Assembly (NCBI RefSeq): GCF_021869535.1 | Contig: NW_026262701.1 | Coordinates: forward strand, 21,576,001 to 21,640,000 | DNA length: 64,000 nucleotides | Direction of reading: 5' to 3' | Source: Mytilus californianus | Lineage: Eukaryota | In this document: piece by piece, positions 17,678-58,607 of the stretch | Position numbering within the stretch: the first letter of the stretch is position 1 | Layout of the letters: each line of letters begins with the position of its first letter | Notes under the pieces: model-generated | What the model saw: only the letters and a program-made list of their open reading frames with translations | The model's database searches: none | Told to the model about the DNA's origin: nothing | Translations under genes and position numbers: made by a program

Positions 17678-17706
17678 TGCTACTAAATCAAGTTTTCTGC
17701 AGGGAT

Positions 17707-33950: not shown

Positions 33951-34019
33951 TTTACCCGGATCGTATCGTATATAAAATGTTTGTCCCAACATTGTTTCTC
34001 TTAATTCAAGTTCAAACTA

Positions 34020-34290: not shown

Positions 34291-35201
34291 ACATCTTCTT
34301 ATATCTATAAATGGTAGTAACATTTGCGTTGTCCAAAGAAAACTGCATATGGATAATATTATAGTGACCGATATGAGACTTTTTCTATTATCAATAGTAA
34401 AAGTATGTAAATATCTACTCATTCAACAATGTTCTTACTTATAAGTCTTTATCTTATCAGAATTTGCTCATAGAATACAGATATAGTGCATGGTGCAAAC
34501 AGAAAATAATAACTGAGATTTTTGTCCCTCCTGTTTTCTGCAAGTAGGAAAACGAATATTTTTGGTGCACACCACACTTTTCCTGTGTATAAGATTACCT
34601 GGATAAACTCAGCAATTTATGTATCTCCTAGATAGGGCTTCAAACGTATTCTTTTTGGTGCAAAACAGCAAACACTGTCAAATTAGCCTCATTTCGATAT
34701 CTTGTGATTGATATTAGATACTTGTATGATTAATAGATTAACCCAATCGTGTGTAAAATGGCTTTTTGTGAAAAAACTGTTGCTACTCATTTATATGTTG
34801 ACCAAAAGCTTAGCTTCAATGTCCGTTTTAGGTAAATTACGAAAATTTCGAGATAATTATGACGTCATGGTGACACCACAAATTACCGTTTTCCATTAAA
34901 GTGTCAAGATTATATTAACCTGTTCATTTGTCAATTAAACTCAGATAAGTTGAGAGGCTTGATATCTACTTTTTTTTGCGATATCAGGGGCCACATAATT
35001 GCTCTTATCCTAGATCTCCTTTGAATGATAGGCGTTATTTAACGAAATGATTTTTCAAGAAAAATTGTTTTCTTTTGCAAAAATTTACACACAATTTATA
35101 AAATATTCGTGTTTTGCTGTCTGCAAATCAATGCAACACAACAGTAACGATGGATGGCTACAAACAAAAAGTTATTAAAAGGAAACACAAATAAAAAATT
35201 A

Positions 35202-35207
35202 TTTATT
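35202..35207 (-). terminator. Poly(A) signal AATAAA, mfp-3 copy 2
   Basis: Position homologous to copies 1 and 3. Confidence 0.65.
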
Positions 35208-35253
35208 CATCATTCATATGCATATCAATATTGATATCTTTCTTGTTTCAGTT

Positions 35254-35412
35254 CTAATTCAGATAGCCTTTGTTTCCATAATATGATCCTACCCATGGAC
35301 CGTTATTCCAGCCCTTATTCCAGCCATAACGTCCGTGATATCCATTGTATCCATTATAGCCATAGTAACCATTGTTGTATTGCCATGGTGAATTATATCC
35401 TGGATAATAATC
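35254..35412 (-). CDS. mfp-3: mfp-3 copy 2 last exon: DYYPGYNSPWQYNNGYYGYNGYNGYHGRYGWNKGWNNGPWVGSYYGNKGYLN* (in frame with exon 1 only if the cryptic acceptor giving exon start 35399 is used)
   Basis: Open, stop-free paralog of exon 3; the canonical acceptor is out of frame with exon 1 because the micro-exon is missing. Confidence 0.8.
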   Translation of the reverse strand, partial: DYYPGYNSPWQYNNGYYGYNGYNGYHGRYGWNKGWNNGPWVGSYYGNKGYLN

Positions 35413-35571
35413 CTGAAATAAAGAAAAACAATTAAATTTTGAATCAATTATGATGTAATCGACATACATTTATTTCAACAGTTACGTATATATAGTATGT
35501 TTGACAATTAGTGAAAATATTTAAAGAATTGAACTTGATGAACTGCTTTAATAACCCAAGCTTTTACTTAC

Positions 35572-35638
35572 CACTCTGCACGGCAAATAATCCAATAAGG
35601 ACTACAGCAAGTAAAACTGTGACACTGAATTTATTCAT
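35572..35638 (-). CDS. mfp-3: mfp-3 copy 2 exon 1, MNKFSVTVLLAVVLIGLFAVQS
   Basis: Intact ATG and GTAAGT donor; 4 synonymous and 1 non-synonymous difference vs copy 1. Confidence 0.9.
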
Positions 35639-35667
35639 TGCTTTTAAGTCAAGTTTTCTGCAGGGAT

Positions 35668-35725
35668 AAACTGATTGATGAGAAATATTCTCTATTCTGG
35701 CTGACAAATCTTTGCGCTTTATATA
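35668..35725 (-). promoter_or_regulatory. Copy 2 core promoter: TATATAAAG (35717-35725) with expanded spacer to Inr-like TCAGTTT
   Basis: 53 nt from TATA start to the Inr-like A vs 26 nt in copies 1 and 3. Confidence 0.6.
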
Positions 35726-36954
35726 CATTTGATATAGCAATCAACTCACTGCAAATGAAGAGGAAAACACCATCACAAACATGATCCTATTACATAAGAT
35801 TGAAATTAGAATAAAAAGTTTAGTGTATTACATAATCCGTATTCCTTGTCATGTTAGATGAAAGAATGAATATAAAATTTTTTAAAATACCAAAAAAATT
35901 ATGAATATGTTAACTTTACGATTCATTAAAAGAAAAAGAAAATCATTATACTGCTGTTGTAATAAGTGACAACCTTTTTCTTTCAAACAAAGGCAATTTT
36001 ACTGAAAGCATTTCTTTGCTATCTCACCCTATTCAAAATGAGAAGAAAGTTGATTTAAAAACCAGCACTTGTTAAACGGGTTTTAACAGAATTTGGGAAG
36101 TGAGATAACTGTGTTGAACCCACGGCTTTTTCAATAATTATTGTTTTCATTGATCTTGCCCATATATAAACTGATTAAAATATATCCATTGTGGGCTATA
36201 GCATGACTCCAAAATGACGTCAGGATACATATTCTGTCCAAACGTTATTGTTTTGTTTTAACGGCTCTTTTTTCTTAACTTTAAAAAGTATTTTCGCCTA
36301 GAAGTGGACGTTTATTACAAAGTTCTATTCGATCTATCAGAATGTCATTTGTTTCGCGCCTTTAACTTCTTTGACTTAACCATTATGATGCGGGGATACA
36401 TTTTTACACCTCTAATCTAGTTAAATAGTGGAGTGCTGGCTTAAAAATAATTTGCCACATGGGATTTTTTTTTTTCAGGAACTTGGCCAACGATGGCTCT
36501 GAATATCTTACATGCACTTTGCAAAGGGGTTTTAACTAAAGTTTCCGTTGCTGATTAACCGTTTTATATAATACTTTTTTATGCTTGTCTTTTTTAGAAG
36601 ACTTTTTCAGTTAAAATGAGATCTGATTATTCAATATCACAAAATTGTTGAAAATATCAAGAAGGGCTATAAATAGCTTGATTCGGACACCACACCAAGG
36701 GGCATAATTATCAATGTCCTATCTTCAACATTGCAGACCAGAATTAAAAATCATGACTACATTCTCTTTTTTGTTGATCTTGTATTGCTGATTATTTTTG
36801 TCTAACAGTATCTCTGTGTCGTCTATTGTTTTTGCTAAAACATAAAAAGGATTAAAACACACTCCTTTTAAGGGCAATAACTCCTATCAGAATACAACTG
36901 ACAAATTCTATGGTGACCTATTTGCAGATCCTGGCTTGCTGATTATTATAAAAA

Positions 36955-37080
36955 TAAGGAGATGTGGTATGATTGCCAATGAGACATTATGAACCAAAAT
37001 TCAAATGTAGTGGATTTAAGCAATTATAGGCAACCATACGGCCTCCAACAATAACAAAAAGGTCCCGATATGAAAATAGG
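36955..37080. mobile_element. Short ATGATTGCC-family repeat nested in HINE-like sequence
   Basis: GGAGATGTGGTATGATTGCCAATGAGAC head only. Confidence 0.7.
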
Positions 37081-38149
37081 TAGTGCAGACGAAGGATTCT
37101 AATAAAAACTGTAGTTAACTGGCCCGATAACACAGTTATTTGGTTGTGTTTTTTTTCAAATTTCTATTTATCCTTCATAGTTTTCAAGATAAAAGGCAAA
37201 TACGCAAACCATTAGAAAAAAGCATGTAGGCACAATAACTCCTATAAGGATTCGTCTGACGATTTCGGTCTTTTGACTTAATTGTGGATCATGTCTTGCT
37301 GATCTTGTTTCTTGTATCTAAAAAATCTATTTATGGATAACAGTTTTCAATATAATAGACAAAAATGCAAACAATGGTACAAATTGTCATTTCAGGACAA
37401 TAACGCCAATAAGGAATCGATGTCAGATTATCTGTAGATATTGTCTTGTGAATCAGTTTTGCTCTTAAACTTTTTCTTTATCTGTTATAGTTGTAAAGAT
37501 AAGAGGCAAAAATAAAAACAAAAATCACTCCTGCAAGACTTCGCCTGACAGATTTGATATAAATAGACAGTATGTAGCTCGCAAAATTTTGAACATTTCT
37601 GCCCGTCAGATTTTCCCATTTTATAGTTGCTAAAAAGATTAAACACAAATTGCATTTGCCCCTGTTGTCTTTTTTTCAGCCATGTCGACCATGTTGGTTT
37701 GCGGACAGGATCATTTGATACTTTTTGCGTTTAAATTTATCAAGGATGGTTTGAGGCTTAGTTTGGTTCTAATTGGCCAAGAAGTTGAAAGGTGAAGTTA
37801 TTTGTAAAAGTAAACGCATGACGACGACGGTCAATGACGAACGACGGACGCAAAGTCATGAAAATATCGCACTTGGAATTTTGGACAATTTAACGTAGAT
37901 TGAAATGCCAGGGTAATCTGGTGTTATTGGTTTTCGTACGAACGAACATTTGTATTTCTTGACGGCTAGTATTCTCTTTATCAAGCCTTATGAACAGTAA
38001 ATGGGTTAAAAGAAAAATTTAAATAGATATTGTAAAATAAAAACGAGGATAATTTTTTTGCAATATTTAATGTATTCCTAGAATAGTCAATTCAAGTTTG
38101 ATACATATTTAACAATGCATTATTTGTAGTGAAGTGAAACCATTATGAA

Positions 38150-38820
38150 GAAGGAGACGTAGTATGATTGCTGGTGAGACAACTATCCACCAAAGTTCAA
38201 ATGAAGTGGATGTAAGCAATTATAGGCAACCGTGCGGCCTTCAACAATGAGAAAAACGTATACCGTATTGTCGGCTATAACAGGCCCAAACTTGAAAAAT
38301 ATGGAACAATTCAATTGAGAAAACAACCGGCCTTATTCATAACAAAACAATTTACAAAATAGAATATGATAGACTTGAACCAACGACAACCAATCTAACG
38401 AAAACACATGTTGGACGTGGCAGCGTATCTATACATCCCACAAGAAAAAAGACTAAGTAAAGATCGCGAGTACTCGCAGGTACTGAGAGCTAGTTCAAAG
38501 CCATTAAACTAATAAAACAAATCATGTATCTAAGACTTACATATTGATAAGTACACATCCAACATCCAATAGATTTAGTATAAAGACGTCATTTACACTC
38601 AGAAAAAAACATGACCTTGTGGAATGCCAAAATGTAGGTATCAACAGATTGTACTATCGTGAATGTGCATATGTGTGTAACATTAGTATTTGGTATGGTT
38701 TTTATATTACTGATAACAAAATCAATATGTATATCAATAAAAACATTATTCAAAGATCAAATTACAGTGTTGAATTCGTAACCTTTTAGAATAAGTTTAT
38801 TTAAAGTATTGATAGGTTTA
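38150..38820. mobile_element. ATGATTGCC-family repeat, long form
   Basis: Colinear with 33317-33950 apart from an internal difference. Confidence 0.8.
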
Positions 38821-41417
38821 CCCGGGTCGTATCTAAATTTCTGGGCTCGTTAAACAACATCCTCGTAAGAATTAGTATGTGTTTTTCCGTTTGAAATAAG
38901 TCGTCTACAGATACAGTCAAACTAACACACAAAATCTTTGTATCTATGATAGAATTTAGTAAAAAAGATTATAGTAATTTGTGGTATCGTAATCACTGAC
39001 TTAATGATCTACCAGTAATACATACATAGATTACACTCATTGAATTTCAAAACTTCACTCGAACACGGGCATAGCGAACGAGTTGTGATATATAAACACC
39101 GTAAGACGGTGCCAAAGCAACATCACCGTCCAAAAAAGAAAATTTTAATTTTTTTATAGTAAATTAGGTGTGCTTGATCGACATTTTTTCCAATGTACAT
39201 GAAAGAAAAAGGTGATTAAAGTACTAGTTTTCTCTTTTTAATCCAACATGAATACACACGAAATAACATCGCATGTTGAATTGATGCATTTATCAAATAT
39301 TATGACTATTTTTGTTGTCCATTGGTGTTATACCCAATTTTTTTTTAAATCTAAAGCTTTATGATATTTTACCAAAAAAATGAAAAAAAAAATAATAATA
39401 ATTTACAAAATTTAATGTTATTATTAATTTCGTTGTCTTTTTTGTTTAATGCGTCTTTTTTTTTTGTAGAATTGTTTGGTTCTGAACAAAATAAGATAGT
39501 CCATGACCTTAAATAAGAAAGAAAAGGTAAGATAATGCCACTTTATTGCTCTTTGAGTTTTATCTTACATATTGGCACTTAGGCTTCAGGCATATTTCAT
39601 TTAAGGTAGATCGGGTGTTTAAATTTTAGCGCCTTCTGCGCAACATGTTGCGCATAGTGTTGTCAATTGTGCAATCTGTCGTTAAATTTTATCAAAATAA
39701 TATTGTAACTTATTATTTTTTAATTTCTGTGAAAATTATCAGAAACGTTTTTTAAATAGTATTTTATTCACTCAATCATCAAAATAATAATCTCATTTCA
39801 GTTTGATTGCTGCAAATTGTTTACTTCCGTTTATGGCGACCCGCACAACATGGTCAAGAATGGAAAAAAAATGAAAAATAAACTGTGATCGTGATACAGT
39901 GGACTGCTTTTTATAAATACTGTGATGTAGAATTGCATATTAACAATATGATCTTCGTCCTGGTAGCGTATGAAGCAATTCAACACAGATTCTGCACAAA
40001 AAGTAGACGACAGAAAAAATCTGAGGTAAACAAGTTAATTTTTGATTCAACCATGCTGGATCTATGCGATCACTCTGGTTTTGGAGATTGTGCAGAATAC
40101 TAAGTTGAAGATATATCATAGAACTAATTATGTGTTTTTACAACTTGCAGAAACTTTCTACACTATTTTAATCATGAACTGACAACTTTTGACATGTTAT
40201 TTGCCCTTAAATTAAGGAAAGATTGGTCGAACAACCCTTTTATTTTAGATATACACTTGCATATAGTTCCTTTGTAAATCAAAATTTATTATGATTCACT
40301 ATCTATGAATTAATTTGAAAAAGTATTTGTACATCAATTGAATCAGTTGATAATAATTTTGAAAGTATTATATTAGTATCTTATGCTTGAGTAAGTTATT
40401 GTTCAATGAAATTTAGGTCAACATGTGTATATATATATCTAAGTTGATTCCCACACTTTTTTGAAATGGTATTACTCCAATTCTTTCCATAGGCAAGTAA
40501 GAGTCAGTATGATTATCAACTGTCATGATTTTCAAATAATTACACTCAAAGGTGTCAGTATTAATTAAAAACAACCCCAGTCTTAATTCACCACAGTTAA
40601 TATATCATGACCTGTTACGTAATTAAATAGACACAATTTATTACACACCTAACTGAATACACACATTCTTGACCTTAATAGCAAACCTACAAATGTATTA
40701 ATTATTTTGATCTACACTAATTTAAAATATTCTGTCAATTTTGCTAGCTAGCTGAATGATTAATCAGATGTGGGTTTTTTTTTCAAAGAAAAGACAACAA
40801 ATGAAAAAAAAATATGTAAAAAAAATGCAAGCAAATTTTATTTCACAAGTAAAATCAGTGTCATTATCATCTGACATAAGTCAATAATCAAGTTCTTATT
40901 AATTAGTCACACTTATCAAAAAATTGGTTGAAATGATAATCAACTTGCGACTAAAGTCGCTCGTTGATTATCGTTTACGAATCCACTACTTCTTATCAAT
41001 TCTCTACTACAGAATGAACACCAATTTAGATAAAAAATAGTTATTATTTTCTTTAATTTTTGTTGTTGAGAAAGTGCATTTCCAAGGCCACTTTCTGAAA
41101 AATTATTAAGCCAGTTATTATTAATGGCATATAAAAAATATATTACTTGTTTGACGATTTCCCTTTCCATTTTTGTCTATACCATTAAATTGCAAATATT
41201 TATAAAAAAAATCTGACAGAGTGTAAGATTATAATATCAATATTTGCATCAGTATTGCGAAATTTTATAGTAAGATTGGAAAAAATATGGTCAGAAAGAA
41301 TATTCGACTAGCTATGAATATGGCTGGATCACAACATCGACGATGATTTGATTTTTTGTGTTGCTGCCTGCCGTAAGTATAATTTATATCGTATCGTCTG
41401 CAATAATCTTACAAATT

Positions 41418-41610
41418 ATGGTCGAAAGATCTCCATCAGGAAGATTCAAAAAAGCAAAAACGTACTTTAGGGCAAATAATTTTATTAACACTGACGACAA
41501 AAACTCACTTTCAGACCCCTCTTCTTCTTATCATAATGAAGACACAGCTTCTGAGATGCCTTCTGTACATGTAGAGGTTCTTGTCAATCTTGACCACACA
41601 TATGCCTTAC
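41418..41610 (+). pseudogene. Probable first coding exon of the transposase (MVERSPSGRFKKAK...DHTYA)
   Basis: Basic R..GRF start and DHxY motif resemble N-termini of this transposase class; followed by a repeat insertion. Confidence 0.45.
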
Positions 41611-41639
41611 CGCTGGTACCGCTGGTTTTCATACCACAA

Positions 41640-42143
41640 AGGGATGATTAGGATTGGCTTTAGGGGGTTATTTCTCAAACAGTTTAGGAATTAGGGACAA
41701 AAATTGGGAAAAAACAAGGGTTTCCTGGTTAATGGACAATTTAAAAGCAGTGTAAGGTAGGTAATACAAAAAAAAATTGAGATTATGACCATATCTTGAT
41801 GGAAAGAATTTTTTTTTGAAAAGGGGGAGGGGGTTAAAAAAGAAATTGTGAGGGCAATTTTTTTTTTTCATTTCAGATTTCAGAAATTAAAAAGAAAACT
41901 TCTTCAAATATTTATTTTTTTGGGGGTCAATTCGCAACAGCATAGTGTATTGCACAAAAGCAAAAAATTGAATATAAATTCAAATGATATAACCAATTCT
42001 AAGTTTATGTGTCAAATATTTAATTACAATCCAAATTCAGACCTGTATCAAGTGCGAATATTGTGTCCATTTTCGCCCCAACTGTTCAGGGTTGGACCTC
42101 TGCGGTCGTATCCAGCTGCGCTTAGCGAAGCATTTTATCTACT
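41640..42143 (-). mobile_element. HINE-like repeat nested in the Kolobok element
   Basis: Minus strand ATAAAATGCTTCGCTAAGCGCAGCTGGATACGACCGCAGAGG end; G/C-run-rich interior. Confidence 0.55.
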
Positions 42144-43616
42144 ATACATGCTATATATATATTCAGACAGAAAGTTTGGGATACACTGGTATCATTTGTA
42201 ACAACAAACATGCAAGTAACCATTTTTTCTGTATAGCACCGAAACCAACAACACAAATGTATGAAACAAATTCCTATAATATATTGACCTATATGTTGTA
42301 TACCCATTTTGCACTAGTGCAATATACCTTAAAAATTAATTGCGTCTATTATAAACAACAAAACAAAAATAAATTTTATTTTTATTAAGCTTGCTTTGAA
42401 AATTTTAATGCAAAATGAGATTCTTTTTTGGACAATATTCCGCATTAATCCTTCAAAAGCTCTATAATACATTTACCATTGATCTCTTTTGGAAAATTTC
42501 ATAATTTAGTCCTTGTTTATTTTCAAGTTATGTAAGTGGTTATAATTAACCACATTAAAATTTATAAGGAAATTCTGTTCACTCAAAAAGTACCATGTTA
42601 AGTTAAAAGGGACATAATCGGGTATATGTTCAAATGAACAGATTGCACACAAGAACACAGTTTTAATAATACATCGAAGATTTAGTTTGAGATCAGTATA
42701 CATACCGTCATTACAAATTTGTGAAAAATTACCAGTAATACATATTTTCAGCATATTGATACAAATGTACAGGATAATTTTCAAATAGAGTTAATAGTCA
42801 AATTACAGATGCAATCTTTACTGTCATGGTAACAATTTGAATATATATATATATAAACATGATAGATGAAAGCTTTATTTTTATACAATAGAAAATGAAG
42901 AAAAAAAGGAATCACAGTATCTGCAGACACTTGCTGGCAAAAAAAAAGGTTCTGGAAGGGCATATAATAGTTTGTCAGGCATGATATTAATTGAGCTTAA
43001 ACAACATGAACAAACAATCAGATAATTTATTTTATTATAAAAACTATTTTTCTGTTAAGCTAGATATATTAGGTCATAGGGTCCTATTTTTTTTTAATTT
43101 CACATTAATACATCCTTAACATTACCATTCTTAACTGTCATACAAAAGTCTCTTGTAGATCTGATAATTTCTCTGCAAATATTTTAGTTAAACTGAATTT
43201 TCATGAAACCTTTATATGAAAGATGAGTTTGAAGATGAATTTTGGTTTTCAAATCCTTCTAATTTATAATAATGACAGTTTATTTCCGTGAAAGGCATGT
43301 TATGTAGATATACACGAAGGAAAACATTTTTTGTCAGAATATTACAAGGGAAGATAATGTTGTGAAATTTTTGAAAGGGGAGACAATTCAGCTTGAAGGT
43401 TTTAACTGATTTAAACGAGAAATATAAAGCTTGGACAATAAATGGCAGAATAGACAAGGAGGAGGGTGTTTTCTTCTGTGAGCTTGATCAAAATAATTAT
43501 AGTTTGGGCTAATGCAGATATTGCTTATTTCTTACAATATTACAATATGGGGCATTTATGTCCTTTAAACTCAAAATTTTATTTAAGCTAGTTTAAATTG
43601 AAATAAATAATTTCAG

Positions 43617-44374
43617 GGGTATCAACATTGATCGCTAAAAATACAGGAGGAGTTGTCCATCATGCAATAAGATGTCAGCAATGCAGAATCTGTGACAGTG
43701 CAACAAAAAGGGGGATTCAGCCCAAAGAGCACAATTGTAAGAAAAAGTGGACAGGCTCAGCAAAGGCTATGGTGCCTGATATGCTAGTTCAGATGGTAAT
43801 GGATGTGAAGAACAAAGGGATCAACATAGATGAAATTGCAGGTGATGATGATACGACTGGATTCGACAGGCTGAAAAAGATATATCCCCAATCAAACATG
43901 ATTAAAACCAGTGACAGAAATCATGTCAAAAAGAAGCAGCTCTTAAAGGTTATGAATTCTTTACTAAAGATTTTTTCATTCATGATAGATCAAAACAAAG
44001 GTGATGTTGAAGGAATGGAAAATGGCCTAAAAGCTATAGTAGAGCACATGTATGTGGACCACACTAATTGTAATAGATCATGGTGTGGATTTCTTAAAGA
44101 CGGAGAAAAATATAAGCACAGTAATTTACCTCATGGAAAAGACCTGACGTCTGATTCATTACGGACAGACATGGAGAAGATATTTTTTGGGAATGAGTCA
44201 GTTAATACAAGCAAGCTTGCATCCCTGTCAAGCTCACAAGCAAATGAAAACTTTAACAACATGATTGCTGCAAAAGCTCCAAAAGCGAAGCACTACTCGT
44301 CATAAGCAAGCTTGGGCTACAGGGTAGATTCTTCTATCTTGCAAAAGAATGAAGGATATGCCTATGTTAGTGAG
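43617..44374 (+). pseudogene. DDE transposase core exon (CxxC...HNC, GDDDTT, DRNHVKK, HxxxDHxxC..WC, SQANENFN..AAKAPK)
   Basis: ORF 43628-44305 plus homologous read-through SLGYRV..ILQKNEG beyond a premature TAA (44303-44305); CAG acceptor and GT donor. Confidence 0.85.
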
Positions 44375-44961
44375 GTGTAACTATATGCACCTTTTATTAG
44401 CTCTTTGAAAAATTTAAAAGATAGATGATCAATGTATACTACAGTCTAAGAGTTACTACTCTGGAAATATTAACTTTAGCAGTTTTTGGCTTTTAATCCC
44501 AAACTACTGTAAATTCAGAAATTATTGCATGCATTTATTATTGCGATTTTTGAGAAATAAACGCTACTGCGAGATTAATAACTGCGATTTATTGCAGTGG
44601 CTCCGGATTTCCAGGTGACGAAATAATTTAAGCTTCTTGAAGCTTGTTGTTATAACTTTCATTCATTGGAAAAACACTACAAACATTCTCTATGGAGATA
44701 ATTATTTGAATGGTCTGAGAAAGAACATTTTTTTTTTCATATTAGGTGAATAAAAATTTAGGCAGATATATCAACAAAATGTATGCAAGATAAATCAACT
44801 TGAATGCATGGATATGGAATATTACATCAGTTACGACTTGTCGCTTTATTTACAACTACATCTAAATTTATATGCTATGTCTCTATTCATATCTTAATCA
44901 GTATGAAAAAAAAATAATTCAAAACTTTGTCTTATTTTCTTTATTTTATATATCTTTGAAG

Positions 44962-45161
44962 GTTCATGCATCCATGGGACTGTCTCCTGGAAAGGAAACA
45001 AAAACAAAGAAACTCCAGAATCAACATGAAAAGGAACTAAAAACAAAAAAAAAGGCAAAAACCAAAGAAGCCAAGAGAAGACGTTTCTTCTTAAAGCAGA
45101 CAAGAACATATGACTTCTAGTAAAGAAATAAGGGAAGGAAAAACTTACGAAAGTGAAATAG
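44962..45161 (+). pseudogene. Transposase C-terminal exon (GLSPGKET...KRRRFFLK...EIREGKTYESEI), one frameshift
   Basis: Splice phases match the neighbouring exons (0 in, 1 out). Confidence 0.75.
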
Positions 45162-45684
45162 GTATATATTAGTACTAAAAAGCCACCATTAATGTTTTCT
45201 GAAATATAATATTTAAATAAATCTTACATAATGAACAGAGTTTCTAACATCAAGGGCAGAATCAGGCGGGAGCGTGGTTGGCATGTGCCCCCCTATAATT
45301 TGTAAAGTATGGGTTGTCCAAAGCTTAATCTCAATAATTTTACCAAAAAAATCTGCGCCCACCTCTCCTTGTCATTTTTTTTTAGTTTGCACCGCCCCTC
45401 CCCCTTTTTTTTTCCCTGTACCTTAAATATTTCATTTAGTAAGATTCATTTATACTGTTATTATGAACTTTAAAATTGTATTTGGATAAATTGGGACTTT
45501 GCTTATTTATAGATTTTAATGTTGAAACAACCAATCTTCATATGTATATGCCTAAATACGATGAGATCTTCAGAATCTTAAAAATGACCACAACTATGCC
45601 AATTCAATACACATGTTTTATACATTTGTATGTTATAAATAAATATTAAAAGAATGCTGTCTTGTGTAGGGGGAAAATATAGAT

Positions 45685-46250
45685 ATAAGAAGATGGGGTA
45701 TGAGTGCCAATGAGACAACTCTACATCTAAGTCAAAATTTATAAAAGTAAACCGTTATTGGTCAAAGTACGGTCTTCAATACGGAGCCCTGGCTCACACC
45801 AAACAGCAAGCTATAGAGGGCCCCAAAAATTACTAGTGTAAAACCATTCAAACGGGAAAACCAATGGTCTAATCTACTAGTATATAAAATACGAAAAACG
45901 AAAACACTTATGAACCACATCAACAAACGACAACTACTGAACATCAGATTCCTGACTTAGAACAGGTTCAAACAATTGCAGCGGGTTTAAATGTTTTAAT
46001 GGTACCAAACCTTCACCCTTATCTGAAACAACAGTGTAACATCACAACATAGAAAGACACACTATAAAATATCAATTGAAATGGCTTAACTCAATCAAAA
46101 GACATATTAACACCAGTGAACATACACTGAACAAATAAATTTGATCTATGATACAATGTAAATACAAAACAAATAAATTAAGGGAAGAATAATTAAAGTA
46201 ACATGTTATACCGCTGTGAAATGTTAAACAATTTAAGAAAAACAATATCC
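45685..46250. mobile_element. ATGATTGCC-related repeat nested in a Kolobok intron
   Basis: AAGAAGATGGGGTATGAGTGCCAATGAGACAAC head and CCTGACTTAGAACAGG core. Confidence 0.8.
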
Positions 46251-46884
46251 TTGAACAAAAATATCAGCCATTTGCAATTACTTTAAACACAGGTAAATGA
46301 AAATAATTTTGTTGTTAGGTATACATGTACAGTTCAAATAGAGAACGGAAATATTTTTACAAAATAAATAATTTTGATGTTCATAGTACGAAGAAGTGAA
46401 AATTTATAGTAATACCAAACACTTATCAAAGCTGGTATAAAGACCAGATATAACCCTGAATAGCATTAAATAACAAAAAAGCATTACAATTAGTATCAAC
46501 AGGTCAAATAAACAAGAAAGTACGATTTGAGAGTACTCGCAGTTACTGACAGCTAGCTAAAAGCCAAAAACATGCATGTATGTAAATATTTTAGAGACAC
46601 TTCCTTTTCTGGTTCTTCTTTGTGATTACTACAGTCTGTGTGAATTTTTTAAATGTATTGAGTTAATTAAAAATGTTGTTTCAAAATTTAAATAAAAGAT
46701 ATAAGGAGATGGGGTATGGGTGCCGATGAGAAAAGTTAATTTAAGAGGATTACTACAATAGATACTTACTCTATGCAGGGATAAAAATCTGTGGTACATT
46801 ACATTTTATATTATCTGCTATTTGAATTATACAAGGTGCACAATGTACATGTTAATCCTTCAATAATTTATGATCAAATTATAG

Positions 46885-47019
46885 GATTAAAACCTGAAGT
46901 AACAGACAAGGAGTCCCAGGAGATTCCTGAAATACAAGACATCACAAAGATCTCTTTGAATGAACAAGAGGTTATCAAAGCACCAGTAATAATTTTTGAT
47001 TTAGAGACAACTGGCCTCA
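46885..47019 (+). pseudogene. Exon ending in DEDD exonuclease ExoI motif IIFDLETTGL
   Basis: TAG acceptor, GTAAGT donor, phase 1 on both sides. Confidence 0.8.
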
Positions 47020-47561
47020 GTAAGTGTAAAATTAACGTCTAATGTTTTAATCTAAGTTTAATTTTGTGATGCACGTCACTTTGATGTGAAAAATGCAAAT
47101 TATACTTGTACATGAATATTGTATGCATGGTAAAAAAAAGTCCATGAGTTAAAAAATGTTTTGCTTACAGTACATCAACAAAAAATTGTTATCAGCACAA
47201 AGCGATTTGTTTATTTTTTTATACAACAGGAAAATTTGAATCACAAAGTTGCGTGCACTATTAAATAGAAACTTTTTGAGTTTATTGTTTGATGTCAATT
47301 GGTTTGTCCAGAACAGATTTAGTGTCAAACATGCATCATTTTTCCTTGGTTAGTTGCTGTCTCTTTCATACATAGCCCATTTTCATTATTTATTATATTT
47401 TATATTCACCTTGACATGCATGTGTCAATAATAATTAAATGCAAGATTTTGTGGCTTTATAAGTGTGTAAATGTGTATGTATGAAGCCAGATAAAAGTTG
47501 TTTTGATATTTCACTTACTCCTTGTCATCAAAGATTCATTTTATTTATTGTTCTATTGTAG

Positions 47562-48105
47562 GTTGGAAATCTGATATTACCCAATTAGCAGCCTATTCAG
47601 AAACAGTGAACTTTAGCACTTACATTTTTCCGTCCCAGGCAATATCCAAAGAAGCATCAGAGGTCACACAAATTTTTGTGAACGGTAATCAGATGTTTCA
47701 CAACAGTACTGCAGTACAATACAAGATGGCCCATGAAGCATTGATGAACTTTATTATATTTTTATCAAGTTTCTAGAAAATGTATTTGTAATTGAAAGAG
47801 GGAATTTTCAGGATAATGTGGTAAAATTTTCATTACCTGTTAGTTATCCTTATGATTCACATGTTATCCAAGAAAACTTGAACACTTTTTCTCATGCTAT
47901 AAATTGTAAAGCAATTTCAAAATCTTGTGCGCTGAAGGCATCAAAATCTAACCTTAAATTGTCTCATTTGAAATTAGCAGCACATCGAGATGGTATGGAT
48001 GGACTTAAAGCCTTACTTGCTGAAAGGTCTAACAAGGGAAGTGTGATAGTAACTAAATGTACAAGAGTTATTCAAAAACTGTTTGATTTTCTGCATGAAG
48101 ATTGA
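47562..48105 (+). pseudogene. DEDD exonuclease body (SDITQLAA...FSTYIFP...ISKEASEVT) and C-terminal KASKSNLKLSHLKLAAHRDGMDGLKALL domain; premature stop and probable internal deletion
   Basis: Splices in frame to give TTGLSWKSDITQLAA; TAG at 47774-47776; ExoII/ExoIII motifs not found. Confidence 0.75.
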
Positions 48106-51100
48106 AATAACATGTAACAATCAAGTCATGAAAAATTACCTGGTTCTCAGGTTTACCAAATGATACAGGGGGAAGGAATTTTATTATGCCCCAATCATAA
48201 AAAGGGAAAGGACCATTTAGATTTACCCTTGTCCTTCCATATATCCTGATCTTGGTTAATTTTTTACCTGCGTTGCAAAAAGCATCATTTATGTTTATCC
48301 TTATACATTTGTATGTAATGATATTGGTTCAGTTTATACTACTGGAGTTCAACGGATAGAAAACTTTCGTCAATGTTTTCTTGGCTTTTATGACAGAGAA
48401 TGCAAATGATTTTAATATTTGTTCTGGGAATGATTATTTATGCTATGGAATACATATTACCTCAATCAATTGAATGCAGACGCAGGTCCTGACCCAGTAT
48501 TTGTCTTGTTGTGTATATATGTCTGTTTCCTAGACATATACATGGTATAGCAATGAATCTAGGGTATTTGAGGGTCCATTTTACACCAAATAAATTTTAA
48601 AAAAGCCAACATTTTTTAATTTTTAAAAAGTTTTGCCAAATTAAAAAGAAATGATTTGCACCATAAACGTGATAAAGTTTACATGAGGTAGAGTCTGAGG
48701 ATCAAGAAATAAATTCTATTTGGTTTAAATAAGAAGATTTATGATGATGTAATTTCTAATGACTGTTTTATAGTATAAAAAAATATGCTTTGTATTTGTT
48801 GGAAAATGTCAAATATATCCTCATTTCCTGATGAGCAATAAATAATCGTACATGGTCCAAATTTGTTGCCATTTTTTTCATTTCAGAAACACACAATATG
48901 AGTGTGACATGTGTGATCTGATCAACATTACTAAATTCCTTCCACACCGACTGAAGGATACATATCCAAACTTATCCAGTGTACTATAGTCTGTAGCTGT
49001 TACTCAAAAAATTAATTGATCACAGAAAATTATCATTTTTTTCCCATTTCAAAACTATCTATTCAATTATATTCAAGATGGATCTTAAGTCCCCCTTTTT
49101 GATGTTGTTGAAGGCGTGATAAAGATTGTTATGAATTCGTCGAGTAATTATATAAGAAACTGGATAAGTGCACTGTAAACCTGGTTTTACCCACAAATTG
49201 CACATGCAAATGTCATTACACAGTCAGAAGTAAGATGGTTGTCTACGGTTTTGACAATGCGTCCACTTATTTCCCGTAAAAGGATATACCAAAAATTGTT
49301 TTTATGAAAATGCAATACAAGCTCTAGCTTCACATGTCAATACTAAAAATATCAATTATTGACCTTGGGTTCAAAGGTCAAGGACACATGCAGTCCTTAT
49401 AGCACATGACCTTCCCTCATTTGATTATACACATACATAACAAACTTCATATTAATATATATAACAATGCAAACAAAATTGTTGACATCCAATCAATCAT
49501 GCATACTTGAAATATCAATTATTTAACCTTGAAGCCAAATGTCAAGGCTTAATTGCTAGCTGTCATGATGGTATATAACAAGCTGTCCCATGGTTTTACA
49601 AAAACATACAATACATCATTGATTTATCTCAAAAGACTAAAATGTTAAGGCTCGCACAATTAACTACAGGTTTATAATATAACACTTCGTAAGTTCAATT
49701 ATTTGACCTTGAAATCAAAGGTCAAGTGAAAAATGTGGTCTTTTTGGTACACAACTCACCCTCTCAATATTAGACACTAACATACCAAATTCCATTGATA
49801 TATCTAAAGAAACAAATAAAATCTGAACAAGAAAAATAGTAAATCTTCAAATTTATTCAATTTATGAATTAAAAGTTAACTCCCTTTTTTGTCTATTTTC
49901 TTGTCTCAATTAACTCGTATCTTTCTTATATGGACGGTGACCTACCATTTTTTTTATTTTCAACTTTTAAATTAACATTTGGAGAATTCAATTACAAAAA
50001 ATAAAAAAATTCTATGGATTAGAAATGCCACTTTTTATTCAATAAATGTATCAAATAACGTTTTTTCCTTCATTGTCTATATGAAATTTGCGTCAAAATG
50101 TTCATTTTACCTTAAATTTTCAAATCAAAACTTTGAGCTTGGAACACTGGTGACCCCATTTTTTTATTTGATAATTTCGAAGTACATATCACTAAGAAGT
50201 TTTCCTTAGAAAATAAAAAAACCCTTGGATAAAAATTTAGACCCCCCATCTACCTTAACGGACTGAACTTCTGATTGACTCTGGCAACAGTTACAATACA
50301 CTGGGCTTTAAGCAACCAGCAATCAATCAATCAGTTACAATACATTGAAACTATCATTTATTTTCTTATGATCAAAGGTATTGGTGAAATGTAAACACTT
50401 CTAAAGCATGGAAGAACTGAAACTTGTATGTTTTCAAGTTTGCTTCTCCCTCAACATTTTGGAAACCTTTATCATGGCAAATGAAAATGTATGATACACA
50501 ATTCTTCTCAAAATGATGCTGATGTTTCGTTGACTTCTTCTAAAAACGTCTATTGCTTGTTTTGTTTTCACGAATTTGCAGTAATTTCCCATATTGCAAT
50601 GAACATGACATGAAAATTAATTAATCAACTTTCGAAACAGAGATGAAGCAATTATATACTTGTCAAAACATTTGCTTAAAAATTTATTCTGTTTGCACGG
50701 CGTGAACATTTTCACCAAATGAAAATTACACTTTATAACTTTATGTTTTATACATATTTCTGTGATTTATATTGATTCGCAGGTTGTCTATCAATTTATG
50801 AAAGTGTGTCATTCTCTTATTAGAGCATCCTGGTGTTCTTATTCTGTGATCAATGCTTTTCAACGTTTCAAATCTTTTCGTATTTCCTTATTTTGTTTCT
50901 AGCTCCATTAGTGAAAACATATTTTAAAATTCACATTTTATGCACCTAATTAATTGTGTACTTGGAGTTTGTATTTTAATTTTTGTTGTTTGTATCTTAC
51001 TAGAAATAGATTTTTGATTATTTTGGTGTTCACGACTTTTTTTTAAAAATTGCACTTTTTAAGAAGATTTAATATTTTTTTCTTGAAACAGATATAAACT

Positions 51101-54100
51101 TCAAACAATTTTTACAATTATGGTTTGACAAGGAAAATATGATATTGGTTTTTTATCATTTTTGTTGATCAGATTAAAACAACGGATCTTCTTTTGGTTG
51201 AAACGACCTTTGCGCACAAGAGCATTTCATTCAACGAGAAAACCCAATACCGTATAGTCAGCTATAAAAGACCCCACCATCAGAAATTCTGTTTGAAGAA
51301 TAGCCCATTTTTCCCTTACCGAAATTGAGTCTTTCATTAGAATACTGTGGTCAAAAGGAAAACAACTACTACAACTACTACAACTACTACTACATGAGAC
51401 AAAGTGGTTTGTTGCGTTAAGCCACAGGAGCGTGTCTCTTATTATATTTAACCCCTACATCTTTATATAACGTCTAGGTTAAAAAATCTGAGACAAGTGC
51501 GTATGCATTAAACCCATACGCAGGACGAACTAGTTTTGTTTTGTTTTTTATTTATTTTTGTTTTTTTTATTCTAACGTACAAGTATTTTAAGTCTTTAAG
51601 AATGAAATTCAAAACTAGGTAGATGCCAAATTTCTTTTATATCTTTTGTTTTTAAAGTGTGTTTCCTGGAGGCAAATGTCAGCTGTAAAATTAAAGCATT
51701 TTTGGTTACTTAAACCAATGGCATACATACCATCAAGTGACCGTGTTATATTTTGTTACCTTTCAAATAAATTAAGACGGATCTTTAAAGGGCTTGGCAA
51801 AAAAAGGTAATTTTATAACAATACCGTAACAAAAATGTTATCAAAGTGACGCAATCCGTACCCATTGGAATATCACTTAAAATGTTTAATTTGATTACCG
51901 AAACGCACGTACACAATACAGTTGTTGTTAAGGACAAAAATGAATCATCTCATCACTCACAGTGGTCTCTAGCTTATCAATTCTTATTTTCCTCGACAAA
52001 ATTTCAGGAAAATACAATAATCGCATTGTCAGTCCGTCATTCCATCCGTCTGTCCGTCTGTCCGTCATGTGACCGTAACAAATGGTTTTCGGAAGACAAC
52101 TTGAATATCCATTGCTAACTTTGAATGAAACTTACAGGGATCAAAAATACATGGAATGGAAAGAAGCCTATTAATATTTGGGCAATAAGTCAAAGATCTA
52201 GGTCACTGGTACTAAAACACGGATGTTTTGGTGGAAAAAGGGTATCCAGATGAAAACTCTGAGGTCAATATGTCAATGGTTAAGGTAACTGTTGCTCTCA
52301 ACCGACCTCCCTTGATTTTTAAATAAGACAGACTAACCTAAAATTAGATGTTTCGCAGTTCTAGTGTCAAATGCTGACATGTTTTTAACCACGGAAGACA
52401 TTTTTCTAGCGTACAATGAATTAATGCACTGTTGCTAACCAGGTTTTGTCAAGACGTCGCAGAGATCTTTCCAATGTCTTTGCGATCGTATTTTTTTTTT
52501 TTGCGGTCTCAGAGACGTCATATCGCGGTTGCAACGTCTATACAACTGTTGTTTTAGCAAAGGGGGAATATACAGTTTAGGACAAAAAGCTAATTTATTC
52601 TAGCAAAAAACAATAATGGACTTTACGCAACGCCGTACAAAACGCAACGTCAACAAAAGACAACGTCAGACAAAAAGCAAATATTCGACAAAAAGCGGTG
52701 TAATAAAAGCATTGACCATACATTTGATGAAAATAGTGGTACTATGTATGATTGAATGAAAAACTAAAAATTAAAAATAAAATATAATTTTTTGTAAACG
52801 TCTTTACAGTATATACTATCTGTATCTCTGTTGCAAGAGTTGTTCTATCAATGTACATATCACGATCTTGAAATATGGGAAATCACTCTAAATTTGTGAA
52901 TAGAAAACCATGCTTAAGGCTGTTTTAAACAAATTAAAGGGGATTGGGGGACCCAACTTCATAACATACGAGTTATTAGTAACTCCATGAATTATCAGTG
53001 TTAAAATTTCACCTTAACGTTTTGTTTTTTTTTTTATTAAAGGAAAAGAATTAATGGTTCCATATTTATGTACCAGATCTTGAGCCAGTAAGTATTTGGG
53101 AACGGAGACCTTTATGTTAGATTGAATTGTTGATTGATAAGGCATTATTTTAGGCAATATGAAACAGATGGTGTCTAAAATATGCAAAAATACAAAAAAA
53201 TCTGACACAAATAATCATGAAGCAAACACGTTTGTACCGGTATCAATTATGTTTGTTTTAATAAATTCATTCAGATGATGCAATGCTTTTAAATAAACAT
53301 AAGACTCTTGTTTACAATAGACATGCGATTTCTGTTAATATCATTAAATTGTGTTGTTAGTGTTCAATTGTAACCTTGAAACAGTGCATTCAAGTGCTGA
53401 ATAGATTTAGAATGAATACCTATTTATTTAGAAGCATTAGATTTTCATGTCTTTGGAAATTCAATGAAAAAAAAAAAATTTAAGTCGTTACTGAGGATGA
53501 TCAACAACAAAAAACAAACTGTTAAAACACGCATCTGAAGTATCAGAATTTAAGCCCAGTATCTTTAATTAGTTGTTCAAACTAAAGTGATGTTACAATA
53601 TTTAACTTATGGATGGCCTGGTAAACGTTGTGTTTTATGTCTAAAGAAAGTGTATGCCCATTCTTTTAAAAGGGTCTGCCGAGCAAATTTTATGGTGTAT
53701 ATATGGCCATGAACTGATTGTCTCTGCTAGTAAAATCAGAATCTTCTTTTTTGAAGTCCCAATTCTCCTAAACTATAATCATTGTAAGGAAATTGAAAAC
53801 AAATGTTTTATTTGAACATCTTTAGGGTACTGCTATGTTTCGTTCTTCATTTGAATAACGTTGTAATTTGTTCGTTTTACTCATTCTTCAGATTTCTGTG
53901 TAGTAATTATTTGTTCTAATTTTGGACTGTTCATTGTACTCAAATATAAAAAAGATCTACATCCCATTTCGAATAAAACCACTTATTCATAGCCCAATTG
54001 CTTTCTATGCTATAGTATGCCTCTTTGAAGCATTTATAGCTATTTTTTCTAAAGTTCAAATAAAATTGCAGTTATTTCATAGAAAAACCATTCCTTATCA

Positions 54101-55320
54101 TGATATGTGCTGAATATTCAACATACCTTCCATTACAAATAAGGGCTCGCTGGTTTCAGGAAGTTTGGTAGTACTAATCAGGTACTTCTGATCTTGGCAA
54201 CAGTGCAAATATGGCATCATATCATAATTTCATATATTTCTATTTCAATATTTAAAAGAATATTTAAAAAATGGTTCTACAGTGATCCAAAGTCCATAAG
54301 CTTCCATTTGATACTAAAATTATCCAAACAGTTTTCTCTTTGACAAAGTTGCAGCTATGCGTAGGAACTATTTTGTATGAATTTGTATATTCTTTGTGAC
54401 CGAGCACAGATTAGAGGTTCTATACCTAAAACAGAACCACACTTGCTACATTGACTTCTCCTTTCCTCAATATCATTATGCTTTATTTCAAGCAAAAAAA
54501 AAGTACATAAAAAATTTGTACCAACATTGTTTCACTTAATTCAAGTTAACACTAAACTGGTAGCAACATTTTATCCAAAGAAAACAGCATATGGATAGTA
54601 TTGTAGTGACCGATATGAGACTTTTTCCATTATTAATAATAAGAGGCATAGTATATAAATATCTACTCATTCAACAATATTGTTCTTACCTTAAGTCTTT
54701 ATCTGAACAGAATTTGGTTATTGAATATAGATATAAAACTGCAAACAGAAAAAGAAATTGAGAATTTTGTCCCTCCTATTTTATGAAAAGGGATATTTTT
54801 GGTGCACACCACACTTTTCTGTATATGTAATAACATGGATAAACTCGAGCAATTGATGTATCTCCTAGATAGGGCTCCAAACATATTACATTTGGTGCAA
54901 AAACAGTAAATGTGTCCAAAATAACCTCATTTTGATATCTTGTGATTATTATTAGATATTTGTATGATTAACCGATTTACCCAAAAATGTTTGTAAAATG
55001 CCTTTTTGTGTAAAACTGTTGCTGTGCATTTATATGTTGACCAAAAACTTAGCGTAAAATATGTAAAATACGAAAATATCAAGATATTTATGACGTCATG
55101 GTGACATCACAAATTACTGTTGTTTACTAAAGTAACAAGATTATATCAACCTGTTCATGTATCAATAAAATTCAGATTTTTCAAAGTTTGAGAGGATTTG
55201 CAAATATTTACATACAATTAACTAAACATTCGTGTTTTTCCAACTGCAAATCAATCGACCACAATAATAACGATGGATTGATACATACAAAAAGTAACTA
55301 AGAGGAAACACAAATAAAGC

Positions 55321-55326
55321 TTTATT
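55321..55326 (-). terminator. Poly(A) signal AATAAA, mfp-3 copy 3
   Basis: Homologous to 14653-14658. Confidence 0.7.
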
Positions 55327-55370
55327 TATCTATCATTCATATCAATATTGATAACTTTCTTGTTTCAGTA

Positions 55371-55529
55371 CTAATACAGATAGCCTTTGTTTCCCGAATA
55401 TGATCCTAAATATGGACCGTTATTCCAGCCCTTATTCCAACCATAACGTCCGTGGTATCCATTGTATCCATTATAGCCATAGTAACCATTGTTGTATGGC
55501 CATGGTGCATTATATCCTTGATCATAACC
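55371..55529 (-). CDS. mfp-3: mfp-3 copy 3 exon 3: GYDQGYNAPWPYNNGYYGYNGYNGYHGRYGWNKGWNNGPYLGSYSGNKGYLY*
   Basis: TTTCAG acceptor, phase 0, open to TAG; full precursor 78 aa. Confidence 0.95.
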   Translation of the reverse strand, partial: GYDQGYNAPWPYNNGYYGYNGYNGYHGRYGWNKGWNNGPYLGSYSGNKGYLY

Positions 55530-55605
55530 CTGAAATTAAAAAAAAAAACATTAAATTTTGAATTAATTATGATGTAGACATATAAAACAATTCAAAACCG
55601 ATGCG

Positions 55606-55882: not shown

Positions 55883-55899
55883 TAACATCAGTTAATAAG

Positions 55900-58578: not shown

Positions 58579-58607
58579 TGCTACTAAATCAAGTTTTCTG
58601 CAGGGAT

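What the first reader, a model, noticed from the sequence alone, without database searches (positions are those of the whole stretch)
39601..50270. Kolobok transposon sits exactly at the duplication breakpoint: candidate transposon-driven amplification of an adhesive-gene cluster
Seen: the element has TTAA on both sides, but its flanks do not rebuild one empty site. The right flank TTAACGGACTGAAC aligns to the start of block 1 (TCAACTGACTGAAC, 6468-6481), and homology stops exactly there, at a one-mismatch TTAA (TCAA). Established: alternative transposition of cut-and-paste elements (e.g. maize Ac/Ds) creates tandem direct duplications with the element at the junction. Inference: the ~33-kb unit 6468-39604 (copies 1+2) was duplicated by a Kolobok transposition event. 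An adjacent deletion after an ordinary insertion is the main alternative.
Basis: partly seen in the sequence, partly recalled or inferred. Interest (0 to 1): 0.8.

Follow-up and report, generated by a model that had tools for sequence, protein, structure and literature searches.

The report
Transposon riding a mussel glue-gene array

Summary
The element at 39605-50254 is a genuine KolobokD-type transposon. It has TTAA on both sides, GG..CC tips and a 20/23 terminal inverted repeat. It carries a Mutator-like DDE exon and a DEDDh/PML-C exonuclease, and at least 7 other full-length copies share the same ends.

Extending 200 kb downstream shows a wider picture than one duplication. There are five direct units of [A+B mfp-3 block + Kolobok], and the element sits at all four joints with identical flanks. 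An inverted partial unit follows. The transposon copies diverge exactly as their neighbouring units do (0.7%, 1.9%). The array therefore grew by unequal crossover, with the element as cargo.

For the founding joint, the left flank, the TTAA and the next two bases (CG) continue a small dispersed repeat seen intact at a paralogous site. Homology to block 1 most likely starts only at 50261, 6 bp beyond the transposon tip. This fits an ordinary insertion with a true target duplication and a nearby non-transposase breakpoint. Alternative transposition would need two substitutions in six bases (P about 0.02).

A transposon-triggered break is not excluded. Short-read contigs could not bridge the joint. 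The decisive test is haplotypes or sister species with the pre-duplication state.

The parts
6470..39604 (.). Unit 1 of the tandem array (block A1 6470-about 28000, plus older paralogous block B1 28949-38065 and the B end).
   Evidence: Self-BLAST and BLAST of unit 2. Identity to unit 2 rises from 91% (6470-18171) to 96-97% (19885-25517) to 99.4% (25539-39604).
6468..6481 (+). X|A1 boundary site, TCAACTGACTGAAC. It holds a single copy of the tetranucleotide, with no element and no footprint.
   Evidence: The inverted copy X'|A6 reads the same apart from a 4-bp slip.
14715..17700 (-). mfp-3 gene of block A1: signal-peptide exon about 17600-17690, Tyr/Gly/Asn/Trp-rich body exon 14715-14880.
   Evidence: Translations. 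The body exon is present in every unit.
35266..35661 (-). mfp-3 copy of block B1 (body exon 35266-35422, signal exon about 35563-35661).
29821..30149 (+). P1, the 12.5%-diverged paralogue of the element's left flank.
30120..30249 (+). Intact copy of the small dispersed repeat M'. It starts about 28 nt before 30149 and runs to about 30249.
   Evidence: Many genome-wide copies. The consensus runs across the TAAA/TTAA site in at least 25 copies. A local second copy lies at about 34640-34740.
39262..39604 (+). P2, the left flank of the element. Its last 28 nt or so are the 5' part of an M' repeat.
39601..39604 (+). Left TTAA target-site duplication.
39605..50254 (+). KolobokD-type DNA transposon, copy TE1 (10,650 bp).
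   Evidence: Family definition from PMC9587614.
39605..39627 (+). Left terminal inverted repeat, starting GGTAGAT.
   Evidence: 20 of the first 23 bases match the reverse complement of the right end.
43607..44302 (+). Transposase exon: C-terminal half of the DDE domain, with CCHC finger, DDD, DRNH (DxxH), a second zinc finger and NENFN.
   Evidence: Pfam PF20700 Mutator-like transposase, E = 1.4e-29, profile positions 177-357. Motifs read from the translation.
46785..48102 (+). Exons of a DEDDh-type 3'-5' exonuclease (DLETTG motif at 46785-47039; 47507-47773) and a PML-C-like tail (47737-48102).
   Evidence: Pfam PML_C E = 8.3e-16. Exu_RNase_H_like E = 0.0034, below its cut-off. The KolobokD lineage is defined by such an exonuclease (PMC9587614).
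50232..50254 (+). Right terminal inverted repeat, ending CCATCTACC.
50255..50260 (+). Right TTAA target-site duplication plus CG, read as the surviving two bases of the interrupted M' repeat.
50261..64000 (.). Start of unit 2 (block A2). The secure homology to 6474 onward begins here. The unit runs on to 80062 outside the window.

Best explanation
The window shows the first one and a half units of a tandem array in the mfp-3/mfp-5 glue-gene cluster. Earlier notes of this scan give the organism as the California mussel; I did not test that.

One unit is about 40 kb. It holds block A (one mfp-3 gene), the older paralogous block B (a second mfp-3 copy) and a 10.6-kb KolobokD transposon.

Shown:
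- There are five direct units and one inverted partial unit.
- The transposon sits at all four direct joints with identical flanks.
- Its copies diverge in step with the neighbouring units.
- The edge unit is a mosaic, old on its left side and young on its right.

Inferred from this: the array grew from two units to five by unequal crossover between units, with the transposon carried as cargo.

For the founding joint, the most likely history is as follows. The transposon inserted in the ordinary way into a TTAA inside a small dispersed repeat (M') at the far edge of the ancestral unit, making a true TTAA duplication. A tandem duplication then arose whose breakpoint fell 2 bp past that duplication, 6 bp from the transposon tip. 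It joined ...TTAACG to GACTGAAC... of block A by end joining or replicative template switching, not by transposase.

Whether the closeness to the transposon is chance or reflects a break or stalled fork at the element is open.
For: Array and passenger status:
- The element is found at 39605, 80063, 121014 and 151530. Unit map.
- All four right flanks and the three intact left flanks are identical. The fourth element has lost its left end.
- TE1-TE3 are 0.7% apart and TE4 is 1.9% from them. Units 2-4 are 0.5-0.7% apart and unit 5 is 2.0-2.5% from them.
- Identity of unit 1 to unit 2 runs 91% to 97% to 99.4%.

Ordinary insertion and genuine target duplication:
- TTAA abuts both tips in every listed copy of the family.
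- The left flank P2 is a paralogue of P1.
- P1 runs straight into repeat M', whose consensus crosses the site in at least 25 genomic copies and in a second local copy.
- P2 + TTAA + CG follows that repeat through base 50260. All similarity is lost from 50261, where block A homology starts.

Against a transposase-made joint:
- The first six flank bases differ from block 1 at two positions, while local A1-A2 divergence is 3.5%. P(2 or more of 6) is about 0.017.
- One of the two differing bases (G at 50260) is the base the M' repeat predicts.
Against: - The discrimination between readings rests on two nucleotides (50256 and 50260).
- The tree near the boundary groups A1 with the inverted A6. Their shared TCAACT is therefore one lineage, and no outgroup polarises the two differences.
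- A breakpoint only 6 bp from a transposon tip is itself unlikely by chance. My rough estimate is 1-2%, given the density of transposon ends. That argues for some causal link to the element.
- No copy of the array end with transposon + intact M' survives. Unit 4 carries a 9.6-kb deletion and unit 5 ends in an inversion.
- Long-read support for the assembly of this near-identical array was not tested.
Confidence: 0.58

Rival explanations
1. Alternative (sister-chromatid or reversed-ends) transposition. The transposase joined the right tip of a Kolobok sitting at the far edge of the unit to a TTAA at the X|A boundary of the sister chromatid. One step would create both the tandem duplication and the element at its joint.
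For: - The element lies at the joint, and the outer X|A1 edge has no element and no footprint. This is the argument used for Ac-made duplications in maize (PMC3744419).
- 12 of 14 flank bases match, with the same spacing as in A1.
- The element is 90-93% identical to other family members, which is similar to the 91% A1-A2 identity. The family may therefore have been active at that time.
- The Kolobok family is strictly TTAA-specific.
Against: - The site in A1 and A6 reads TCAA, not TTAA.
- The next-but-one base also differs. That makes two differences in six bases at 3.5% local divergence.
- The differing G, together with the preceding C, is what the interrupted M' repeat predicts. The original right flank therefore appears to be still attached to the element.
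- All four joints are copies of one joint, so at most one event could be of this kind.
Confidence: 0.12
2. A tandem duplication already existed, with a larger unit and a joint elsewhere. The Kolobok inserted normally into the spacer. A later deletion next to the element removed the spacer, the old joint and the end of X, leaving block A 6 bp from the tip.
For: - It gives the same final sequence as the best explanation.
- Deletions beside this element do occur here. Unit 4 lost 9.6 kb of block B plus the first 103 bp of the element.
Against: - It needs three events instead of two.
- No remnant of X sequence lies at the joint. The R repeat near the B end is a different subfamily, only 73% like the one in X.
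Confidence: 0.15
3. Unequal crossover between two Kolobok copies, one at the far edge of the unit and one (possibly polymorphic) at the X|A site, produced the first duplication.
For: - Elements that cut and paste often hop locally (general knowledge).
- A crossover between homologues could leave X|A1 empty.
- The element is present at every joint.
Against: - It predicts the same right flank as alternative transposition (block A's own TTAA and next bases), so it meets the same two-base conflict.
- It needs two independent full-length insertions 33 kb apart. The end searches found about nine copies outside the array in 1.65 Gb, seven of them with both ends.
Confidence: 0.04
4. The array, or part of it, is an assembly artefact: near-identical haplotypes or collapsed/expanded repeats laid in tandem.
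For: - Units 2-4 are 99.3-99.5% identical over 30 kb.
- Mussel genomes are highly heterozygous (general knowledge).
- Short-read contigs did not bridge the joint.
Against: - There are no N runs in the 264 kb examined.
- Each unit has private structural marks: a 927-bp deletion in TE3, a 242-bp stretch missing from TE1 but present in TE2-TE4, a nested 3.4-kb element in TE4, and the truncation of unit 4.
- The graded divergence (0.7%, 2%, 4-6%) is hard to get from two haplotypes.
Confidence: 0.04

Closest known systems
[quoted passage not shown]
   Same: TTAA target duplication, 5'-RR..YY-3' tips (here GG..CC), a DDE transposase with CCHC finger, DxxH motif and second zinc finger, and an added DEDDh exonuclease. 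The lineage is reported from molluscs.
   Different: This copy is 10.65 kb, while the other genomic copies are 12.4-13 kb. The N-terminal transposase exons were not found, so it may be internally deleted and non-autonomous. The PML-C-like tail is not mentioned in the passages of that paper I read.
Tandem direct duplications made by alternative transposition of maize Ac/Ds (PLoS Genet 2013, PMC3744419)
   Same: An element lies at the joint of two direct repeats, and no element lies at one outer edge of the duplication.
   Different: There, the endpoints coincide precisely with the element tip, and the target duplication is shared with the reciprocal product or outer edge. Here the joint is best placed 6 bp outside the tip, the original target duplication appears intact, and the outer edge reads TCAA. 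The TTAA specificity also makes the target-duplication test uninformative.
Tandem gene arrays grown by unequal crossover (non-allelic homologous recombination)
   Same: Identical joints in all units, interior units nearly identical, edge units older and mosaic, and cargo such as transposons diverging in step with the units.
   Different: None for the growth phase. This model does not explain the founding joint.
Microhomology-mediated break-induced replication / fork stalling and template switching, and gap repair after transposon excision
   Same: A joint without a target duplication of its own, similar short strings (T-AAC) on both parents, and a nearby inverted duplication in the same locus.
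   Different: There is no clean microhomology at the exact joint, no templated insertion was recognised, and the link to the transposon is only positional.

Membership tests
Kolobok superfamily | [quoted passage not shown] | tested here: met
   TTAA on both sides of all intact array copies. TTAA also abuts 25 of 25 listed left ends and all 100 listed right ends of 525 genome-wide matches. Definition from PMC9587614.
Kolobok superfamily | Termini 5'-RR ... YY-3' with short terminal inverted repeats | tested here: met
   GG...CC tips. 20 of the first 23 bases are inverted-repeat matches.
Kolobok superfamily | DDE transposase with C/DxxH motif and a zinc finger between the second D and E | tested here: inconclusive
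   Exon 43607-44302 matches Pfam PF20700 at E = 1.4e-29 and shows CCHC, DDD, DRNH, H..H..C..C and NENFN by eye. The exon with the first catalytic D was not found, and no Kolobok-specific profile was available.
KolobokD lineage | Encodes a DEDDh (DnaQ-like) exonuclease similar to exuperantia/TREX/ERI1 | tested here: inconclusive
   DLETTG motif in exon 46785-47039. Exu_RNase_H_like E = 0.0034, below the curated cut-off. PML_C E = 8.3e-16. A PDB sequence search of one exon gave nothing.
Duplication by alternative transposition (Ac/Ds type) | Duplication endpoint coincides precisely with the transposon tip | tested here: not met
   TTAA + CG after the tip continue the M' repeat of the left flank. 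Block A homology is secure only from 50261. This rests on two bases, so it is not absolute.
Duplication by alternative transposition (Ac/Ds type) | The target sequence next to the joint element equals the sequence at the outer edge of the duplication | tested here: not met
   TTAA at the joint versus TCAA at X|A1 and X'|A6. A1 and A6 are sister copies, so this counts as one lineage.
Duplication by alternative transposition (Ac/Ds type) | No element and no excision footprint at one outer breakpoint | tested here: met
   X|A1 has a single tetranucleotide and the same spacing as the joint flank.
Duplication by alternative transposition (Ac/Ds type) | Reciprocal deletion product, or far end of the array with footprint or element plus original flank | not testable with these tools
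   The far end is remodelled by the unit 4 deletion and the unit 5 inversion. No other haplotype copies exist in this assembly.
Array growth by unequal crossover | All joints identical, and cargo diverges in step with the units | tested here: met
Array growth by unequal crossover | Edge units older and mosaic | tested here: met
   Unit 1 runs 91% to 99.4% identity. Unit 5 runs 96-97% at its start to about 92% distally; as substitution distance, about 2% to 4-6%.

The most novel reading that the evidence does not exclude
The founding duplication of the mfp-3 unit was triggered by the Kolobok without being joined by its transposase. One route: after excision from one chromatid, gap repair re-copied the element from the sister, ran 6 nt past its tip and then switched template to the start of block A. 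A transposon-induced break would thus have seeded a glue-gene array, which later expanded by crossover.
Probability: 0.25. Interest if true: 0.6.

Novelty: new member of a known kind. Interest (0 to 1): 0.36.

Why it matters
mfp-3 is one of the main surface-bonding proteins of the mussel holdfast, and it is known for its many variants.

This locus shows how the gene number grew. A 40-kb unit with two mfp-3 copies is repeated five times in direct order and once, in part, inverted. The transposon-linked units encode a body exon with a different C-terminal end (…GPYLGSYSGNKGYLY against …GPWGGY).

The case is also a caution. A transposon exactly at a duplication joint looks like the signature of alternative transposition. 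Here a few bases of surviving flank, read against a dispersed repeat, point to an ordinary insertion next to a non-transposase breakpoint.

If the break was nevertheless caused by the element, this would be a natural animal example of a DNA transposon seeding the expansion of an adaptive gene family.

Tried and rejected
1. Public reads. Only short Logan contigs were available. They break at the high-copy transposon end and at a 35-bp high-copy motif (50299-50333). No listed piece bridges 50254|50255, so they give no verdict on the joint, on empty-site alleles or on other species.

2. Fetching other Kolobok copies. Family divergence therefore comes only from BLAST identities, and flanks only from pattern output.

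3. Search for an empty-site or alternative context in the same assembly. Block A starts and P2 occur only in this locus, so no haplotig offers the earlier state.

4. Search for the lost continuation of the left flank. The sequence after P1 turned out to be a dispersed repeat, which changed the reading rather than locating 'Y'.

5. Kolobok tips at other breakpoints. None were found at the older A/B boundary, at the inversion joint (186129) or at the outer palindrome edges.

6. TE4's extra 3.4 kb as an 'ancestral full length'. Rejected: it is a nested element with its own inverted ends.

7. PDB sequence search of one exonuclease exon: nothing.

8. One search was a wasted alignment.

9. N-terminal transposase exons were not found by ORF scan.


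Full report
Coordinates. The window is G000:C121:21576001-21640000 of a 1.65-Gb eukaryotic genome. I joined the window with 40 kb upstream and 160 kb downstream. All positions are in window coordinates (C121 position minus 21576000). Positions above 64000 lie in loci L025-L040 and negative ones in L021-L024.

THE ELEMENT

The stretch 39605-50254 is bounded by TTAA on both sides. Seven other copies of 12.4-13 kb elsewhere in the genome match both ends, and their homology begins at the element's first base and ends at its last. Two more on contig C2 match the left end and only part of the right. Pattern searches that print the matched letters show TTAA next to the tip in all 25 listed left ends. 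The same holds for all 100 right ends listed out of 525 matches. That large number points to a family of short derivatives sharing the right end.

The tips are GG..CC, and 20 of the first 23 bases form an inverted repeat. Exon 43607-44302 matches Pfam PF20700 (Mutator-like transposase) at 1.4e-29. It shows a CCHC finger, DDD, DRNH, a second zinc finger and NENFN. Downstream exons carry a DLETTG exonuclease motif, a weak exuperantia-type RNase H-like match and a strong PML-C match.

These features are the published definition of Kolobok: TTAA duplication, RR..YY tips and the C/DxxH motif. The added DEDDh exonuclease defines the KolobokD lineage, reported from molluscs (PMC9587614). The first catalytic exon was not found, and this copy is about 2 kb shorter than its relatives, so it may be non-autonomous.

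THE ARRAY

The map is:

| Segment | Coordinates | Note |
|---|---|---|
| X | -4863 to 6469 | upstream flank |
| Unit 1 | 6470-39604 | |
| TE1 | 39605-50254 | |
| Unit 2 | 50255-80062 | |
| TE2 | 80063-90966 | |
| Unit 3 | 90967-121013 | |
| TE3 | 121014-130976 | |
| Unit 4 | 130977-151537 | lacks the last 9.5 kb of block B |
| TE4 | 151530-165886 | lacks its first 103 bp; holds a nested 3.4-kb element |
| Unit 5 | 165887-186129 | |
| Inversion joint | 186129 | |
| Unit 6 | 199398 back to 186130 | inverted partial unit |
| X' | 199399-211118 | inverted copy of X, 92-96% identical |

There are no N runs in these 264 kb.

Every unit carries an mfp-3 body exon in block A, and units 1-3 carry another in block B. 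The translated exon is the Tyr/Gly/Asn/Trp-rich sequence expected of mfp-3 from my own knowledge. The species name and the gene layout come from earlier notes of this scan, which I checked only in part.

GROWTH OF THE ARRAY

All four right flanks and the three intact left flanks are identical, so they are copies of one joint. Repeated transposition would have given different targets.

| Comparison | Substitution distance |
|---|---|
| TE1-TE3, pairwise | 0.7% |
| TE4 vs TE1-TE3 | 1.9% |
| Units 2-4, pairwise | 0.5-0.7% |
| Unit 5 vs units 2-4, next to the joint | 2.0-2.5% |

The transposon thus diverges exactly as its neighbouring units do. Unit 1 is a mosaic: 91% identical to unit 2 on its left, 96-97% in the middle and 99.4% over its last 14 kb. 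Identical joints, co-diverging cargo and old mosaic edge units are what unequal crossover between units produces. The transposon was cargo in this phase.

ORDER OF EVENTS NEAR THE BOUNDARY

In the first 3 kb of block A, units 1 and 6 are closest to each other (3.2-3.7%), and these are the two units attached to X. Units 2-5, attached to the transposon, form the other group. The two groups differ by 3.9-6.6%. The split between the X-linked and the transposon-linked block A is therefore the oldest event. The inverted copy X'-A6 arose later from X-A1. Because A1 and A6 are sisters, their shared TCAACT counts as one observation.

THE FOUNDING JOINT

That holds at BLAST resolution. The left flank P2 (39262-39604) has one paralogue, P1 (29821-30149; 12.5% substitutions), and their BLAST match ends at the TTAA. 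Block A is preceded by X in both X-linked copies.

The sequence after P1, however, is not unique DNA. It is a dispersed repeat, M', with many copies. In at least 25 copies its consensus runs across the site, reading (C/T)TT(A/G)CATTTAGT followed by GCAAAACAGC. A second local copy shows the repeat starting about 28 nt before the site. P1 reads CATTAAAC then GCAAAAC. P2 plus the right flank reads CATTTAAC, then G, then GACTGAAC.

So the left flank, one TTAA and the two bases CG rebuild a continuous piece of M'. The expected CAAAAC is replaced from 50261 by block A. This is the picture of an ordinary insertion into a TTAA inside M', with a true target duplication and a separate breakpoint 2 bp past it.

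The alternative-transposition reading makes TTAACG homologous to TCAACT of block 1. It needs two substitutions in six bases where the next 400 bp differ by 3.5%. The probability of two or more is about 0.017. One of the substitutions must also have produced the very base that M' predicts. I estimate a likelihood ratio of roughly 30 to several hundred against it. This rests on two nucleotides and has no outgroup.

WHAT MADE THE BREAKPOINT

The exact joint has no clean microhomology, although both parents read T-AAC just before it. End joining or a replicative template switch fits. The same locus also holds an inverted duplication and a 9.6-kb deletion without Kolobok tips, so such events happen here.

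A breakpoint only 6 bp from a transposon tip is unlikely by pure chance; my rough estimate is 1-2%. A break or stalled fork at the element therefore remains a live possibility. One example would be gap repair that re-copies the element from the sister chromatid and then switches template. I give this about 0.25.

Adjacent deletion in an older array gives the same sequence with one more event (0.15). Crossover between two Kolobok copies meets the same two-base conflict as alternative transposition and needs a second nearby insertion (0.04).

TIMING

The array element is 90-93% identical to other family members, and block A1 is 91% identical to A2 on the same measure. The family may therefore have been active around the time of the first duplication. 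This is compatible with all readings.

COMPARISON WITH KNOWN CASES

Duplications made by maize Ac have endpoints that coincide precisely with the element tip, a target duplication shared with the reciprocal product, and no element at one outer edge (PMC3744419). Of these, only the last is met here. The first is not met on the best reading, and the second is not informative because every Kolobok target is TTAA.

WHAT COULD NOT BE DONE

- Public runs were available only as short contigs, which break at the repeats around the joint.
- No other haplotype of this locus is in the assembly.
- The far end of the array, where the two models differ most, has been remodelled.

VERDICT

The transposon is a known kind. 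The transposase-driven mechanism is not favoured, although a looser causal role of the element in the founding break is open.

Noticed in passing
L037:2129 (window coordinate 186129) with L038:5399-L039:7118 (199399-211118): About 25 kb (X plus the first 13 kb or so of block A) is present again in inverted order. It is joined to unit 5 without any Kolobok tip, giving a large palindrome-like end to the array. The outer edges lie at -4863 and 211118.
   Followed up: partly
L033:7537 (151537) and L037:2129 (186129); equivalent to window 29979-30063: The 9.6-kb deletion of unit 4 and the inversion joint of unit 5 both break inside the P1 segment, only 84 bp apart in unit coordinates. This may be a fragile spot rich in A/T runs.
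   Followed up: no
L033:8687 to L034:2061 (152687-156061): A 3,375-bp element with its own inverted ends (ACCCAG...CTGGGT) is nested in the fourth Kolobok copy only.
   Followed up: partly
window 14715-14880, 55383-55541 and equivalents in L028, L032, L035, L038: The mfp-3 body exon ends ...GPWGGY in the two X-linked copies (A1, A6). It ends ...GPYLGSYSGNKGYLY in the four transposon-linked copies (A2-A5). The array therefore multiplies a distinct C-terminal variant.
   Followed up: partly
It is absent from units 2-6, so it entered after A1 and A6 split.
   Followed up: partly
L025:839 (64839), also 105781 and 145882, and a variant in unit 5 near 181150: A second, short Kolobok-like end (TTTA then GGTAGATGGGGG) lies inside an extra 1.2 kb or so that units 2-5 have and unit 1 lacks. 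The region did not resolve into a clean insertion.
   Followed up: partly
window 50299-50333: A 35-bp motif with very high copy number in four short-read data sets from three labelled species. Contigs end on both sides of it.
   Followed up: no
window 5913-6448 and L040:1467-2286 (215467-216286): The interspersed repeat R in X is cut off at about 6448, some 21 bp before block A starts, whereas a fuller copy runs on for 300 bp more. The X|A region may itself hide an older breakpoint.
   Followed up: partly
G000:C2:50569361-50582497 and C2:51000458-51014126: Two Kolobok copies 431 kb apart share the same truncated right end, which suggests another segmental duplication carrying this element.
   Followed up: no
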